Both the position numbers and the translations under genes were made by a program. Of a DNA stretch of 64,000 bases, positions 7,070 through 16,659 are shown in pieces (position 1 is the stretch's first letter; every line of letters starts with the position of its first letter). The DNA lies in the IMG/VR virus record IMGVR_UViG_3300025364_000003, positions 62,001 through 126,000 of that record, one strand, 5' to 3'. The notes beneath the pieces were generated by a model. It was not told where the DNA came from. It saw only the letters and a list, made by a program, of their open reading frames with translations, and searched no databases.

Positions 7070-7852
7070 TCAAGCTTCGTCGAGGTCGTCCTCATCGTCG
7101 TCGTCTGCCGCTGCTGCTCGGGCCTGTTCGAAGCAGAGTCCCTTGGCAGTGAGATCGAAGTTGTAGAAGGTTCCGGCGACACCGAATCGGTTCTTGCGCA
7201 TCTCGCAGACTCGCTCCTCGTACTCGGGATCATAGGACAAATGAAGGTGACAGTCGACGATATGCTTGATCGTCTGCTTACCTGAGAATTCACCCTTCTT
7301 GTTCACGTGACCGATAAGGAACAGGGTGACCCAATTGTTCTTGGCATACTCAGTAAGCTTCTCTAGGGCCATGATCTGCTGCTTGTCCTTGCCAGGCGGA
7401 CGGCCCCGACCACCGGCCGGACGAACCGTAAGGCACTGGAGCGAATCCTGAATGAGGAAAAGCTGCTTGCCGGGGTGCTTAGCCCGGATGCGCTCGCAAT
7501 GTTCGATGATATCCTCGGCGTCTCGGTTGTACGACGGGATGAACCCATGCTTGAGGCTGAGACGCTTCGTCACACGGCGCACCTGGTAGAGGGACTCCTC
7601 ACCGGTGTTGACGATTACCTTGTGCCCCATGCGAGTCAGGTTGTCGGCCAACTGGAGCATTAGCGTGGTCTTGCCCGCACCGGGCCCACCGCTCACCAGA
7701 GAGACCGTACCGGCGATAATCCCATCGCCAGCGTAAAGCAGATCAATGTGCTGATGCCCCGTGGGGATCGCCACCTCCATCTGCGGGGGAACTTCGATAT
7801 CCAGAATGTTGCCATCGATATCGACGGTGGGCTGTCCGATTCCAAGCTTCAT
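7070..7852 (-). CDS. radA: RadA/Sms-like RecA-family ATPase (ATPase domain only)
   Basis: Walker A GGPGAGKTT, GEES, Walker B IQDSLQ, IGHVNKKG, H.VD, KNRFG signature; no N-terminal Zn finger and no Lon-like C-terminal domain. Confidence 0.85.
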   Translation of the reverse strand: MKLGIGQPTVDIDGNILDIEVPPQMEVAIPTGHQHIDLLYAGDGIIAGTVSLVSGGPGAGKTTLMLQLADNLTRMGHKVIVNTGEESLYQVRRVTKRLSLKHGFIPSYNRDAEDIIEHCERIRAKHPGKQLFLIQDSLQCLTVRPAGGRGRPPGKDKQQIMALEKLTEYAKNNWVTLFLIGHVNKKGEFSGKQTIKHIVDCHLHLSYDPEYEERVCEMRKNRFGVAGTFYNFDLTAKGLCFEQARAAAADDDDEDDLDEA

Positions 7853-8214: not shown

Positions 8215-8748
8215 ATGACTCAGGATCGACTTCGTAGCACGGGCCGCAAGCCCACTCTCGACGTGACCGGCATCCAGGCGCTCCTGGAGCGCTACATGGA
8301 CGGCAGCAACGTCTCCATCTCCACCCTCGCCGAGGAGCAGAGCCTCACCACGGCCACCGTCCGCAAGTACCTCAAGGCGGCAGGACTCACCCTGCCCCGA
8401 GGCCGAGCCGCTCTCAAGCCCCGTGAGGTGATCAGCGTGCGCACCCTCATGAACCGTATGTCCGTGGAGGATCTTCTCGGTTCGGGCCGTGTGGAGCTTC
8501 TGCGCCGCCGCCTGGAGCTGGGTCAGAGCATGACCAGCCTCGCCACCGAGTTCGGCCTCAGCCGTGACCGGATCCGCAAGTTCCGGGACGAGTCGGGTCT
8601 GGCCCCGGAGGTCAGTGCGGAGGCCGAGGCGCCCGAGAGCCCCGAGGAGCCCACGGTCGAGGAGTCGGCCGAGGAGTCGGCCGAGGAGGCGGTGGCCGAG
8701 ACCACCGAGGATGCCATGGAGACGGCCGAAAGCACCGAGCGGGTCTGA
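8215..8748 (+). CDS. Tandem-HTH protein with sigma4-like C-terminal HTH and acidic tail (paralog 1)
   Basis: HTH1 ISTLAEEQSLTTATVRKYL; HTH2 MTSLATEFGLSRDRIRK; paralog of 27402..27878. Confidence 0.8.
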   Translation: MTQDRLRSTGRKPTLDVTGIQALLERYMDGSNVSISTLAEEQSLTTATVRKYLKAAGLTLPRGRAALKPREVISVRTLMNRMSVEDLLGSGRVELLRRRLELGQSMTSLATEFGLSRDRIRKFRDESGLAPEVSAEAEAPESPEEPTVEESAEESAEEAVAETTEDAMETAESTERV

Positions 8749-8915: not shown

Positions 8916-9926
8916 ATGGCAAGATCACGAAGAATTTCCAGAAAGAAGACTCCCGAGGTTGTGATTGCCGAGGGTGTTCTAACGAAAACAATTCCTGGAG
9001 ACCTTATCGATAGATTTGAGGTGCCAGAAGGCACTCGTGTTAAAATTGCACGTATTATCAATACGCCGATCGGACTACGTTTTCGTATCATTAATACGAC
9101 CAGGTGGATCCCCCAGGACAGTATCAACTGTGATTTCGATCATAATCTAATCGTCGATTATGTAAAAATCGCAAATGAAAACAGAAACAGGAAATTGACT
9201 CAGTCTGGGGACGGCTTTAACTCTAAAGGGTACAAACCTGATAAGGAGTTTGTTAGAACTGACAGTGTCTCAAGAAGGAGACATGGTAAACAAGGAAGGA
9301 CTAAAACCATGGATAAGAAAGACCTAAAAGATGCTATTGTAGCACTAACTACCGGGGACCGTGTCTCTGTGACGTTTCTTAGCACAATGCCTGGCGGTGC
9401 TTCAAACACCCGTTATGATGGCATTCGTGGCTTTGCTGGCAAGACCGTTGAGGCGACTCTTGTTGAGACGAAGAAGGGACGTGGCAAGGGCGGTTCCCAG
9501 CTGATGGTTCTCAAGACCGATGATGGTGAGAATTTTACGACTGGCACCCCACACTCTGATGTGATTCTGAACTTCACTACTCCTGCGGGTATGGTTGGTC
9601 ATGAGTCCGAGGCGGATGCTCCGAAGTCGTTCGAGACCAATGCTGGTCAGGCAGCTGAGTTGAAGGAGCAGTTCAAGAACCTCGTGGGCACTGTTGGTGC
9701 CACTGTCCGTGTTCAGTCCACCGAAAGTGAATACACGGGTGATTTCACGGTAACCGAAGTGGAGCAGCTCCGTGGCCGACACGGTCAGATTAGACTCCAT
9801 CTACAGGGTGACGATGGTCGGAACTTTACGCTCTGGAGCTACCGTCACAGTGGTGTGGTTACCAGTTTTGAAGTCCTTACTGAGGGCACCACACAGTCTG
9901 CATCTACGAGCACCGAGGCTGCTTGA
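8916..9926 (+). CDS. Hypothetical protein with duplicated beta-barrel domains (second start likely ATG 9309)
   Basis: Strong SD before 9309; internal repeat TGDRVSV..GRGKGG..TDDGENFT versus VGATVRV..LRGRHG..GDDGRNFT. Confidence 0.7.
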   Translation: MARSRRISRKKTPEVVIAEGVLTKTIPGDLIDRFEVPEGTRVKIARIINTPIGLRFRIINTTRWIPQDSINCDFDHNLIVDYVKIANENRNRKLTQSGDGFNSKGYKPDKEFVRTDSVSRRRHGKQGRTKTMDKKDLKDAIVALTTGDRVSVTFLSTMPGGASNTRYDGIRGFAGKTVEATLVETKKGRGKGGSQLMVLKTDDGENFTTGTPHSDVILNFTTPAGMVGHESEADAPKSFETNAGQAAELKEQFKNLVGTVGATVRVQSTESEYTGDFTVTEVEQLRGRHGQIRLHLQGDDGRNFTLWSYRHSGVVTSFEVLTEGTTQSASTSTEAA

Positions 9927-9980: not shown

Positions 9981-10197
9981 GGGCAAGAGCCCGTAGATTC
10001 CCCGGAGGTTGCACCCAAACAGCACGGATAAGGCCGGGTGCTGACTTGGTCCAACGGAAATAAAATTCTGGCCTTAATAGTCTTCTTGGCCTGCCCCCAC
10101 CTAGAAGATGAAGTCGCCTGGGGGAAGTCTTGGTCATGCGGGAGTGCAACCCTGATCTTGTCCAAGGCGAGCGCTCTACGGCCCTCTGAGGGCTTTT
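9981..10197 (+). ncRNA. Candidate structured non-coding RNA (~185-215 nt)
   Basis: No credible ORF; nested long-range helices GGGCAAGA/TCTTGTCC and GGTTGCAC/GTGCAACC, inner hairpins, own terminator GCCCT-CTG-AGGGC-TTTT. Confidence 0.55.
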
Positions 10198-10200
10198 AAT

Positions 10201-10232
10201 AAAGAACCGGGCTCCTGGCCCGGTTCTTTTAT
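10201..10232. terminator. Bidirectional terminator
   Basis: AAAGAACCGGGC-TCCTG-GCCCGGTTCTTTT between convergent transcription units. Confidence 0.85.
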
Positions 10233-10322
10233 TTTGGCGGTCCTGAAAGCTTCTCAGACGTTCAAGAGGACCATCTCCATCGGGTGGCTTTCCGGGATCG
10301 GTCTCATCTCTGGGAGATATTC

Positions 10323-11081
10323 TTATTCCTTTGGGAAGAGGGTTTTGACCCTCTTATTCAAGCTGGCCAGCTTCATCATCTCGCTGTAGAGTTGACCCAC
10401 TTGATTCTGGGTAGCAGTTTTATTGTTGATATCCTTGAGGTACTGTTCCAGCTCTTGGATCAGATTTGTCACCTGGTTGCAGACGGCCATCTTTCGGTTT
10501 GTCTGTTGAGCAAGTCTGCGGGCCTTTCTCTTTTCCTGAGCTTCGCCCCAATTACCGTTTTCCTTTTGTTCCTTGACCCAAGCCTTGCGGGCTTCCTTAT
10601 AAGCTGGAAGAAATCGGCGTTCCTCTAGGACTTCAAGCTTCCTACGGGTTTTCTGCCAGTCGGGATGCCGATGCGTTTCGCTCGGACCATCCACCTCATC
10701 GGTCATGTATCGAAGATGGGGAGCGCCTTTCACCCAAACGATGGTCTTGAAGAAGGACCAGCCTCCCATACGGAGGAACACCTGGCCAGAAGGTGTAATT
10801 GCAAAATTAATCCTGGCATAAGACATGTTCTTAGCCCAATGATTTACTGACTTTTCGACCTCATAAGGCTTAAAATTTGGGTCGGCCTTCTCGGTTCGTT
10901 CTATAGCTTTCAAAAATTCACGGGATGTTCCAGAGAACAATCGAATGTCGTCGTAACAGTAAAGAACCCCGTGGTGTCGAGCGTACTCATTGGCATATTT
11001 CCAAAGGTCAGGAGCCGGAGGAGCCTTGTAAGACTTATAGCAGGGTAGCAGTTCGATTTCGTAGTTCTTTTTATTGTTCAT
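10323..11081 (-). CDS. Hypothetical protein
   Basis: 252-aa ORF with plausible composition and coiled-coil C-terminus. Confidence 0.75.
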   Translation of the reverse strand: MNNKKNYEIELLPCYKSYKAPPAPDLWKYANEYARHHGVLYCYDDIRLFSGTSREFLKAIERTEKADPNFKPYEVEKSVNHWAKNMSYARINFAITPSGQVFLRMGGWSFFKTIVWVKGAPHLRYMTDEVDGPSETHRHPDWQKTRRKLEVLEERRFLPAYKEARKAWVKEQKENGNWGEAQEKRKARRLAQQTNRKMAVCNQVTNLIQELEQYLKDINNKTATQNQVGQLYSEMMKLASLNKRVKTLFPKE

Positions 11082-15545: not shown

Positions 15546-15666
15546 TTGATTTAGGCTCCTACCCGGCATTGCAGCACGAACCAAGTCGACATTGGTTCTC
15601 GGGATCTTCTGTGAGCAATTTCCCAATGGGAACACAGATGTTCTCTGCTTGAACTATAAGAGCTAG

Positions 15667-15739
15667 TGACCCCAACGGGATTCGAACCCGTATTAACAGC
15701 GTGAAAGGCTGCTGTCCTGAACCGTTAGACGATGGGGCC
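15667..15739 (-). tRNA. trnE: tRNA-Glu(UUC)
   Basis: GGCCCCA/TGGGGTC acceptor stem, GCAGC-CTTTCAC-GCTGT anticodon arm, GGTTCGAATCC T-arm; followed by CTA, not CCA. Confidence 0.95.
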
Positions 15740-15902
15740 AAGCGTGTAGAAGTTGCGACCCACAGAGTCTACACCCTCTGTGCATGTCCAGCAGTGTCGG
15801 TGGTGGCCATTTGTAGTGCGGGCCTGTTAGGAGGCAACCGCCGGGGGACATTATTAGTTTAGCAGGAATTAGCTTGAATATGAACCCCATTGGGGAATTT
15901 AG

Positions 15903-16301
15903 TTATTCTCGGTTGTCTTTACAGCGATGACAATCATCACAAAGGGGTTGAATGTTGTCAACAGTGTTGGAACCGCCATCACTCATCGAGTGGATGTGAT
16001 CAAGTTGTAAATTGAGATCAAATGTTCTGCAATAGCTGCATTTATGCTTGTAATCAAGCAAAATCTGGGCCCAGGCCCGAGATTGCAGTCTGCCAGGCAG
16101 TTTTCTCTTTTTTGCTCGTCTGTTGTGCCGATGAGTTCTTCGTTGGCTGTCAGCAAAACAATCGTAACAAATTTTGTATTGTCGTTTGTTTGCGACGCAT
16201 TGCTGATCAATGGTATGTCCTCTGTTTTGTTTTAGGCAACAAAGCGCACAGTGCACCTTTGTCGTGTTGAGCACAACAATGGGAGGAGCTGACAGTGACA
16301 T
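15903..16301 (-). CDS. HNH endonuclease with N-terminal Cys motif, inside the tRNA cluster
   Basis: CSYC...LDHIHSMSDGGSNTVDNIQPLCDDCH. Confidence 0.9.
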   Translation of the reverse strand: MSLSAPPIVVLNTTKVHCALCCLKQNRGHTIDQQCVANKRQYKICYDCFADSQRRTHRHNRRAKKRKLPGRLQSRAWAQILLDYKHKCSYCRTFDLNLQLDHIHSMSDGGSNTVDNIQPLCDDCHRCKDNRE

Positions 16302-16335
16302 AACTTTATCAATTTACTGTAAAATGCTTCGCTTA

Positions 16336-16419
16336 TAGGGCCGGTGGGACTCGAACCCACAAGGGCTTGCGCCCGAGAGATTTTAAGTCTCCTCTGTATG
16401 CCAATTCCAGCACGGCCCC
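16336..16419 (-). tRNA. trnL: tRNA-Leu(UAA)
   Basis: Anticodon loop CTTAAAA, long variable arm GGGCGCAAGCCC, GGTTCGAGTCC T-arm; no encoded CCA. Confidence 0.95.
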
Positions 16420-16502
16420 GTGAAATGTTTAACTATAGGTCACCCAAAGTCCCTGCATCCACTTTGAAAAAATGGTGACTAAAATCTTACTCATATCATT
16501 GA

Positions 16503-16575
16503 TGGGTCCAGAGGGAATCGAACCCCCAACCGTCGGGTTAAAAGCCCGCTGCTCTGCCGATTGAGCTATGGACCC
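16503..16575 (-). tRNA. trnK: tRNA-Lys(UUU)
   Basis: GGGTCCA/TGGACCC acceptor stem, loop CTTTTAA, GGTTCGATTCC T-arm; no encoded CCA. Confidence 0.95.
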
Positions 16576-16659
16576 AATACCAGGTTCTCCCACCATTGGG
16601 ACATTGCCTGGCTAGAACATCTCTATGTTAGCATGCCCGAGCCCAAGTTTGAACCGATT

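What the first reader, a model, noticed from the sequence alone, without database searches (positions are those of the whole stretch)
9981..10197. Second candidate ncRNA: 183-nt closed fold with possible pseudoknots, 6S-RNA sized
Seen: GGGCAAGA (9981) pairs with TCTTGTCC (10156) and GGTTGCAC (10007) with GTGCAACC (10144). Inner stems are CAGCAC/GTGCTG and CCCCCA/TGGGGG. Crossing pairings are TAAGGCC (10029)/GGCCTTA (10070) and CCGTAG (9991)/CTACGG (10176). A terminator follows. It shares short words with the 26873 RNA (5' GGCAAGAG, TCCCCGGAG, GCCCCCA), which may be chance. Inference: the size matches 6S RNA, and a promoter-mimic decoy for host sigma70-RNAP would fit a phage that brings its own sigmas, but the fold looks more branched than the 6S rod.
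Basis: partly seen in the sequence, partly recalled or inferred. Interest (0 to 1): 0.65.

Follow-up and report, generated by a model that had tools for sequence, protein, structure and literature searches.

The report
Triple-pseudoknot RNA of a huge phage
The stretch encodes a real, conserved, about 185-nt non-coding RNA of a 461-kb hypersaline-lake phage that folds into three hairpins locked by three pseudoknots, matches no known RNA family, is not a 6S RNA, and has an unknown function.

Summary
The candidate is real. Homologous sequence lies at the same place in eight other metagenomic contigs of related phages. It sits downstream of a conserved 336-aa gene. Six helices, three of them pseudoknots, are kept by compensatory changes: 89.9% of cells are paired against 37-43% when partners are slid, and 29 of 47 pairs change on both sides. 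The three helices that were not used to fit the alignment do as well.

The outer stem GGGCAAGA/TCTTGTCC is window-specific and competes with a conserved hairpin. CCGTAG/CTACGG is only a possible end-closing stem.

G·U outnumbers A·C 47 to 4, so the + strand is the RNA. No reading frame is conserved. In three relatives scanned, intrinsic terminators lie on both sides or at least upstream. The RNA is single-copy and unrelated to the 26873 RNA.

Rfam 15 gives no match. The fold is a compact knot, not a 6S rod, so the 6S reading is not supported.

The function is inferred, not shown. The most likely reading is a trans-acting RNA that works through its shape, as a protein-binding decoy or scaffold. 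A ribozyme or an aptamer is not excluded. No RNA-seq data were available.

The parts
9981..9992 (+). Window-specific 5' mini-hairpin GGGC-AAGA-GCCC. It may be the 5' end of the transcript in this phage. It is not conserved in relatives.
   Evidence: Sequence. No homologous bases in the alignments.
9991..9997 (+). 5' strand of a possible end-closing stem P0. CCGUAGA pairs with UCUACGG at 10175-10181.
   Evidence: 7/7 pairs in the window. By eye, analogous pairings occur at the same position in L020, L007 and L004, weakly in L008, and not in L009, L015 or L017. The position is not column-conserved, so the stem is unproven.
9998..10006 (+). Conserved leader UUYCCCGGRG. No proven partner.
   Evidence: Nearly invariant in nine sequences. 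It could pair with the linker CCCAYYGG or with GGGRAA. Neither option can be tested, because there are no informative changes.
10007..10014 (+). PK3 5' strand (GGUUGCAC).
   Evidence: Pairs with 10144-10151. 92.9% of cells are paired, and three pairs change on both sides (L004, L015). This helix was not used to fit the alignment.
10020..10043 (+). Hairpin H1. The stem is 10020-25 / 10038-43, and the 12-nt loop carries the 5' strand of PK1.
   Evidence: 96.1% paired. Four of six pairs change on both sides.
10028..10037 (+). PK1 5' strand, inside the H1 loop.
   Evidence: Pairs with 10068-10077. 92-96% paired, and six of ten pairs change on both sides. RNAalifold also predicted it on a MAFFT alignment. 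The mat variant's 10036 G>A turns a G·U into an A-U.
10044..10067 (+). Linker J. It holds the conserved GRYCCAYYGGAA followed by an A-rich run, and forms loop 3 of pseudoknot 1. L007 has a 33-nt extra hairpin at its 5' edge.
   Evidence: Alignments. The insertion is visible.
10068..10077 (+). PK1 3' strand.
10080..10109 (+). Hairpin H2. The stem is 10080-86 / 10103-09, and the loop carries the 5' strand of PK2 (10094-99).
   Evidence: 78-86% paired despite imperfect alignment. Three pairs change on both sides, for example GCUUC/GAAGC against GCUUG/CAAGC.
10119..10124 (+). PK2 3' strand (UGGGGG), pairing with 10094-10099.
   Evidence: 89.6% paired. Five of six pairs change on both sides.
10127..10168 (+). 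Hairpin H3. The stem is 10127-39 / 10156-68, and the loop carries the 3' strand of PK3 (10144-10151).
   Evidence: 86.5% paired. Eight of twelve pairs change on both sides. RNAalifold also predicted it.
10169..10175 (+). Conserved 3' tail GAGCGCU. The AGCGCU part is identical in all eight complete sequences. No partner was found.
10181..10197 (+). Small variable hairpin with a U run. It may act as a weak first terminator.
   Evidence: Sequence. Relatives have non-homologous hairpins here.
10201..10235 (.). Strong bidirectional intrinsic terminator, shared with the convergent 252-aa gene.
   Evidence: The mat variant has a compensatory 10204 G>T with 10226 C>A.
8916..9926 (+). Upstream neighbour, a 336-aa protein of tandem SH3/Tudor/KOW-like beta-barrels. 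It was the anchor used to find the RNA's relatives.
   Evidence: No Pfam or PHROG family. Homologs, fold.

Best explanation
Window 9996-10176 (+ strand) is the core of a stand-alone gene for a compact non-coding RNA. No family in Rfam 15 matches it.

The core is about 181 nt. With the variable 3' hairpin and the terminator the transcript would be about 240 nt.

Shown:
- The RNA forms three hairpins (H1, H2, H3).
- Each hairpin loop pairs with a distant single strand. The H1 loop pairs downstream (PK1). The H2 loop pairs downstream (PK2). The H3 loop pairs back to the 5' region (PK3), so the molecule is closed on itself.
- Linkers of only 1-2 nt separate PK1 from H2 and PK2 from H3. A-rich third loops are present.

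Inferred:
- Coaxial stacking of those adjacent helices.
- Transcription on its own, from a start a few bases upstream of UUCCCC, ending at the intrinsic terminator(s).
- Action in trans through its three-dimensional shape rather than through a long antisense seed. The most likely role is a high-affinity ligand (decoy or scaffold) for a protein.

Candidate partners are the co-located tandem beta-barrel protein, which has invariant Arg/Gly-rich loops, or a host factor.

The patchy presence among close relatives suggests an accessory function, such as host takeover or counter-defence, rather than an essential one.
For: 1. Homologs lie at the same place in L009/L010, L008, L004, L007, L015, L020 and L017. 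L018 and L019 carry 5' parts. These come from independent Logan and ENA assemblies.
2. All six helices: 89.9% of cells paired against 37-43% slid; 29/47 pairs change on both sides against 3-10; 0/500 shuffles reach this.
3. The three helices not used to fit the alignment: 90.2% against 25-40%; 12/23 against 1-4; 0/500.
4. G·U 47 against A·C 4 fixes the strand.
5. No frame stays open in all homologs.
6. The core is as conserved as the neighbouring coding gene (74-81% against 73-79% nucleotide identity), while its flanks cannot be aligned.
7. In the microbial-mat variants the covered part of the core (9996-10176) has two changes, about 1%. One is in a loop and the other improves a pair. The adjacent coding sequence has about 7%.
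8. An intrinsic terminator lies between the upstream gene and the RNA in L009, L015 and L008. Terminators also lie downstream in the window, L009 and L008.
9. A promoter-like site in L008 ends about 7 nt before the RNA.
10. The RNA is single-copy in the 206-kb record.
11. For the protein-ligand inference there is only context. The neighbour is a beta-barrel protein with invariant GRGKGGS and R-G-R-x-G motifs, and the RNA follows it in most lineages.
Against: - No transcript evidence. No RNA run holds the sequence.
- A promoter passes the scan in only one relative and not in the window. Read-through of the upstream terminator followed by processing is therefore not excluded.
- There are only nine sequences, from one phage clade, so per-pair statistics are limited.
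- The partners of three highly conserved segments (leader, linker J, tail) are unknown.
- L017 lacks PK3.
- The RNA is absent from L005, L006 and L011, although the 336-aa gene is present there. This argues against an obligate RNA-protein pair.
- Nothing tested here tells protein binding apart from catalysis or small-molecule binding.
Confidence: 0.5

Rival explanations
1. It is a ribozyme, self-cleaving or otherwise. The interlocked pseudoknots build an active site, as in the HDV, glmS or twister ribozymes.
For: The fold is of a complexity mostly seen in ribozymes and riboswitches (my own knowledge). There are six covarying helices, three pseudoknots, and invariant junction and tail nucleotides.
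Against: No match to any ribozyme model in Rfam, even at E <= 10. The helix order does not fit the HDV nested double pseudoknot. No candidate cleavage site could be identified.
Confidence: 0.15
2. It is a cis element of the upstream 336-aa mRNA. It would be reached by read-through of the weak upstream terminator and would act as a 3' stabiliser, exonuclease block or processing signal.
For: It has the same strand as that gene and follows it in all lineages that carry the RNA. Promoter evidence is weak.
Against: A strong 12-13-bp terminator with a U run separates the gene from the RNA in L009, L008 and L015. The gene does without the RNA in L005, L006 and L011. A stabiliser would not need this much conserved tertiary structure.
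Confidence: 0.1
3. It is a base-pairing small RNA. The conserved single-stranded leader or linker J acts as the seed against a phage or host mRNA.
For: It ends in an intrinsic terminator with a U tail, like many small RNAs. It has conserved unpaired stretches of 9-12 nt.
Against: About two thirds of the core nucleotides are in conserved helices, which is unusual for seed-type small RNAs. No target was sought or found. The leader and J are partly complementary to each other, so they may simply be another internal helix.
Confidence: 0.1
4. It is a ligand-binding aptamer of riboswitch type. It would sense a metabolite and control termination at the weak hairpin 10181-10197, or would act in trans.
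For: Pseudoknotted compact fold. A weak hairpin with a U run lies directly behind the core in the window. A local hairpin CCGGAA/UUCYGG could compete with PK1 as an alternative conformer.
Against: There is no gene downstream on this strand, only a strong terminator and a convergent gene. The small hairpin is not conserved. There is no Rfam riboswitch match.
Confidence: 0.07
5. It is a 6S-like decoy that mimics an open promoter and sequesters host sigma70 RNA polymerase.
For: The size is about 185 nt. Relatives carry sigma-70-family genes nearby.
Against: No 6S match. Covariation supports three pseudoknots and no long rod or central bubble.
Confidence: 0.03
6. It is not an RNA. A short ORF or a DNA-level site is the conserved unit.
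For: Short ORFs overlap the region in the window. The conserved words CCCGGG, GCTAGC and AGCGCT are DNA palindromes.
Against: Every frame has stops in L008, L007 and L015. Compensatory changes and the 47:4 excess of G·U over A·C are strand-specific RNA signatures. GCUAGC is explained by the ends of PK1 and H2.
Confidence: 0.02

Closest known systems
6S RNA (Rfam 6S families)
   Same: Length of about 185 nt. A stand-alone gene ended by a terminator.
   Different: No covariance-model match. The fold is knotted and globular, not a rod with a central bubble. No evidence of RNA polymerase binding.
tmRNA pseudoknot string (PK2-PK4)
   Same: Several H-type pseudoknots in series. Huge phages are known to carry tmRNA genes (my own knowledge, after PMC7162821).
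   Different: No tRNA-like domain, no tag reading frame, and no ARAGORN or Rfam hit. Here the last pseudoknot folds back onto the 5' region.
Orphan complex-folded bacterial and phage RNAs (raiA, ROOL, GOLLD, HEARO)
   Same: Conserved, intricate, pseudoknot-containing RNAs of unknown function, some carried by phages, recognised by covariation only (10.1101/2024.12.08.627333; PMC5737381).
   Different: No sequence or model similarity. This RNA is much smaller than ROOL or GOLLD. It is restricted so far to one clade of huge phages from saline and mat habitats.
Dicistrovirus intergenic IRES
   Same: About 190 nt built from three pseudoknots (my own knowledge; PMC13273307 describes two- and three-pseudoknot forms). 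It is an example of an RNA that works purely by shape, as a tRNA/mRNA mimic on the ribosome.
   Different: It belongs to eukaryotic RNA viruses and must be followed by an ORF. Here a terminator follows. No homology was tested or expected. This is an analogy only.
Double-pseudoknot ribozymes (HDV-like, glmS, twister)
   Same: Compact cores held together by crossing helices, with invariant junction nucleotides.
   Different: No model match. The order of helices differs. No cleavage site is known.

Membership tests
6S RNA | Length of roughly 180-200 nt | tested here: met
   The core is 181 nt, 9996-10176.
6S RNA | Long, largely double-stranded rod with a large central bubble that mimics an open promoter | tested here: not met
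   Covariation supports three hairpins and three pseudoknots. No end-to-end rod is conserved.
6S RNA | Match to a 6S covariance model | tested here: not met
   No hit at the gathering score or at E <= 10.
6S RNA | Binds sigma70 holoenzyme and templates pRNA | not testable with these tools
   Needs biochemistry.
tmRNA | tRNA-like domain and tag reading frame | tested here: not met
   ARAGORN finds four tRNAs and no tmRNA. There is no Rfam tmRNA hit.
Any Rfam 15 family (ribozymes, riboswitches, RNase P, SRP, introns and others) | Covariance-model match | tested here: not met
   The only sub-threshold hits (E 0.06-10) cover the terminator at 10195-10310.
Conserved structured non-coding RNA (generic standard) | Helices maintained by compensatory changes well above controls | tested here: met
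   0/500 shuffles, and slid controls at 25-43% paired.
Conserved structured non-coding RNA (generic standard) | Not explained by a conserved reading frame | tested here: met
Stand-alone small-RNA gene | Own terminator | tested here: met
   A compensatory change occurs in the terminator stem.
Stand-alone small-RNA gene | Own promoter | tested here: inconclusive
   The scan passes only in L008. By eye, TTGAAC/TTAAAC-N18-TATGCT-like words overlap the upstream terminator in L009, L018 and L015. Nothing convincing is seen in the window.
Stand-alone small-RNA gene | Detected transcript with defined ends | not testable with these tools
   No RNA run holds the sequence. All holders are DNA contigs.

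The most novel reading that the evidence does not exclude
This is a new class of catalytic or self-assembling RNA carried by huge phages. The self-closing triple-pseudoknot core would be either an active site (a new ribozyme) or a protomer that associates through its invariant self-complementary words (CCCGGG in the leader, AGCGCU in the tail), like the RNA-only assemblies recently seen for ROOL and GOLLD.
Probability: 0.12. Interest if true: 0.85.

Novelty: categorically new. Interest (0 to 1): 0.62.

Why it matters
Complex-folded RNAs with several conserved pseudoknots are rare. Historically they have turned out to be ribozymes, riboswitches or key ribonucleoprotein parts.

This RNA is small enough (about 185 nt) for direct structure determination. 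It comes from a nearly uncharacterised group of 460-kb phages of saline habitats and has no relative in Rfam.

It would add to the few known phage-borne structured RNAs. It also gives a concrete handle (an RNA, its neighbouring beta-barrel protein and a clear secondary-structure model) for asking what huge phages do with non-coding RNA.

The novelty claim applies to the family and the fold. Whether the function is new is not known.

Tried and rejected
- **Rfam.** I scanned the whole window at gathering score and the region at E <= 10. Only terminator look-alikes came up.
- **Single-sequence folding.** Both strands gave z = -1.7 and -2.4, which is not informative for a pseudoknotted RNA.
- **Phage GenBank collection.** blastn found no match.
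- **IMG/VR.** Protein-anchored searches and a DNA pattern found only the same phage, the 461-kb contig. Searches with two distant homologs of the neighbour found nothing.
- **JGI metagenome pattern scan.** It gave 47 hits. Two are the same phage and the other 45 look like chance on inspection.
- **Species-genome pattern scan.** It gave 23 hits. The covariance model rejects all of them. The one with the right spacing, from a Rhodothermales MAG, appears on inspection to lie in a coding region.
- **Paralogy with the 26873 RNA.** Rejected. That region also has no Rfam match.
- **The whole 461-kb contig.** A model search was not possible because the record is not held.
Rejected, because it is not conserved and it overlaps H3.
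- **A universal end-closing stem.** It is not consistently present.
- **The local hairpin CCGGAA/UUCYGG.** It is possible in all sequences but shows no covariation and competes with the covarying PK1.
- **Pairing of the leader with the linker or with GGGRAA.** It cannot be tested, because both sides are invariant.
- **The palindrome GCUAGC as a dimerisation site.** Rejected. Its bases belong to the ends of PK1 and H2.
- **Fold of the neighbouring protein.** It is tandem SH3/Tudor/KOW-like barrels, with low TM-scores and no functional assignment.
- **Expression.** No RNA runs were available.
- **Literature.** Two full-text searches found no description of such an RNA. The supplements of the IMG/VR RNA-motif survey PMC10690425 are not held, so prior listing there cannot be excluded.

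Full report
**Setting**

- The window is bases 62001-126000 of a 206.5-kb IMG/VR virus record estimated to be 45% complete.
- The same locus is 100% identical in a 461-kb contig.
- Five hypersaline-lake DNA runs hold the sequence completely. Two microbial-mat runs hold a variant.
- The candidate lies between two convergent ORFs: 8916-9926 (+, 336 aa) and 10323-11081 (-, 252 aa). Neither has a Pfam or PHROG family.
- A 13-bp bidirectional intrinsic terminator sits at 10201-10229.

**Known families**

- Rfam 15 finds only four tRNAs in the window at gathering score.
- At E <= 10 the region gives only weak small-RNA hits, and all of them sit on the terminator.
- ARAGORN finds no tmRNA.
- Nested minimum-free-energy folding is not significant (z = -1.7 on the + strand).

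**Relatives**

- The 336-aa protein has 28 metagenomic homologs. I fetched the contigs of twelve of them.
- Sequence homologous to the candidate lies directly downstream of the gene in L009/L010, L008, L004, L007, L015, L020 and L017. It also lies at the contig ends of L018 and L019.
- It is missing where the intergenic space is only 53-99 nt (L006, L005) and in L011-L013.
- The conserved block runs from about 9996 (AGAUUCCCC) to about 10176 (GAGCGCU). The sequence on either side cannot be aligned.
- Nucleotide identity of the core to the window is 74-81%. The neighbouring coding gene is at 73-79%.

**Structure**

Reading the alignments and RNAalifold gave six helices. In window coordinates, verified, they are:

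| Helix | 5' strand | 3' strand | Note |
|---|---|---|---|
| PK3 | 10007-14 | 10144-51 | 3' strand lies in the H3 loop |
| H1 | 10020-25 | 10038-43 | hairpin |
| PK1 | 10028-37 | 10068-77 | 5' strand lies in the H1 loop |
| H2 | 10080-86 | 10103-09 | hairpin |
| PK2 | 10094-99 | 10119-24 | 5' strand lies in the H2 loop |
| H3 | 10127-39 | 10156-68 | hairpin |

- No nucleotide is used twice, so all six helices can coexist.
- I built a covariance model from seven sequences using only H1, PK2 and H3. I then aligned nine sequences to it.
- On that alignment the full six-helix structure has 89.9% of cells paired, against 37-43% when the 3' partners are slid by 1-3 columns.
- In the same test, 29 of 47 pairs have changes on both sides, against 3-10 in the slid controls. 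No shuffle out of 500 reaches the observed values.
- PK1, PK3 and H2 were not part of the model, so the fitting cannot have favoured them. They score 90.2% paired against 25-40%. They have 12 of 23 pairs changed on both sides against 1-4, and again 0/500.
- G·U cells outnumber A·C cells 47 to 4, so the + strand is the folded one.
- L007 carries a 33-nt extra hairpin at the H1/linker boundary.
- L017 has lost both strands of PK3 together.

**Population variation**

- The microbial-mat contigs cover 9996-10390 and 10044-10325. They differ from the window at two positions within the covered part of the core.
- 10036 G>A converts a G·U of PK1 into A-U.
- 10115 C>A lies in a loop.
- The adjacent coding sequence differs at about 7% of positions.
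- The terminator stem shows the compensatory pair 10204 G>T with 10226 C>A.

**Not an ORF, not a repeat**

- Every one of the six frames contains stops in L008, L007 and L015.
- The model finds one copy in the window and in the 206-kb record. It does not find the 26873 region, so the shared short words are chance.

**Transcription unit**

- In L009, L015 and L008 a 12-13-bp intrinsic terminator stands between the 336-aa gene and the RNA. Another terminator follows the RNA in L009 and L008.
- Promoter evidence is weak. One site passes the scan, in L008: GTTACA-16-TATTAT, ending about 7 nt before the RNA.
- By eye, L009, L018 and L015 carry TTGAAC- or TTAAAC-N18-TATGCT or TAAGCT words that overlap the terminator loop.
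- The window has nothing convincing.
- The window's bases 9991-97 pair perfectly with 10175-81. By eye, L020, L007 and L004 have different but analogous end-to-end pairings. L009, L015 and L017 do not. I treat this stem as possible only.

- Four of the six pairings, the presence of pseudoknots and the terminator are right.
- The outer stem 9981/10156 is wrong as a conserved feature.
- The 6S idea fails two of the three defining features that could be tested.

**Function**

Nothing here measures function. Several points argue for an accessory, trans-acting RNA that works by shape:
- the stand-alone arrangement;
- the absence of any downstream gene on the strand;
- the patchy distribution among close relatives;
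- the location in a variable region with homing endonucleases in relatives;
- the very high share of nucleotides tied up in conserved tertiary-type structure.

My preferred reading is a protein-binding decoy or scaffold. The neighbouring protein is a chain of SH3/Tudor/KOW-like barrels with invariant GRGKGGS and R-G-R-x-G motifs. That makes it a candidate partner, but the gene occurs without the RNA, so the link is weak. Ribozyme, aptamer, seed-type small RNA and 3' cis element remain open and are listed with their tests.

**Searches that found nothing more**

Pattern scans of IMG/VR, the JGI metagenomes and the species genomes returned only the same phage plus chance hits. As far as these collections show, the family is confined to a small clade seen in saline-lake, microbial-mat and beach-sand assemblies, plus several Logan assemblies whose habitat I did not check.

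Noticed in passing
It has no Rfam match at E <= 1, and the covariance model of the present family does not hit it.
   Followed up: partly
window 10236-10262 (also L009 3816-3838, L004 3784-3800, L007 3845-3866): A conserved word GGCGGYTCYTGAAAGCTTCT lies just beyond the bidirectional terminator, in the 3' untranslated part of the convergent 252-aa gene. It is kept in several relatives although the surrounding bases differ. On the minus strand it can form a small hairpin.
   Followed up: no
L009 3490-3535, L008 3571-3616, L018 1340-1385, L017 2400-2455: A conserved word GTTTCCAAGGTTGGCCCC leads into the terminator hairpin upstream of the RNA in four relatives. It is absent from the window. It could be part of a regulatory or processing signal.
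   Followed up: no
L007 3620-3652: A 33-nt insertion that can form its own hairpin (palindromic core GGAAGCUUCC) sits between H1 and the linker. It marks a peripheral, insertion-tolerant site of the fold.
   Followed up: partly
L017 2469-2649: This is a divergent family member. Both strands of PK3 are gone: the 5' strand is replaced by a local GGGC-UUGA-GCCC hairpin and the H3 loop is shortened. The H1 loop carries a 5-nt insertion.
   Followed up: partly
window 8916-9926: The 336-aa neighbour is predicted to be a string of small SH3/Tudor/KOW-like beta-barrels with a disordered stretch at residues 92-129 and an invariant GRGKGGS loop. The family is known only from metagenomic phage contigs.
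   Followed up: partly
window 15666-16576: Three tRNA genes (Glu, Leu, Lys) lie on the minus strand, with an HNH endonuclease ORF (15903-16301) between them.
   Followed up: no
window 7070-7852 and 8215-8748: A KaiC/RecA-like ATPase (minus strand) and a small resolvase-type HTH protein (plus strand) precede the 336-aa gene. This trio is syntenic in nearly all relatives. Sigma-70-family genes lie a few kb downstream in L005 and L006.
   Followed up: partly
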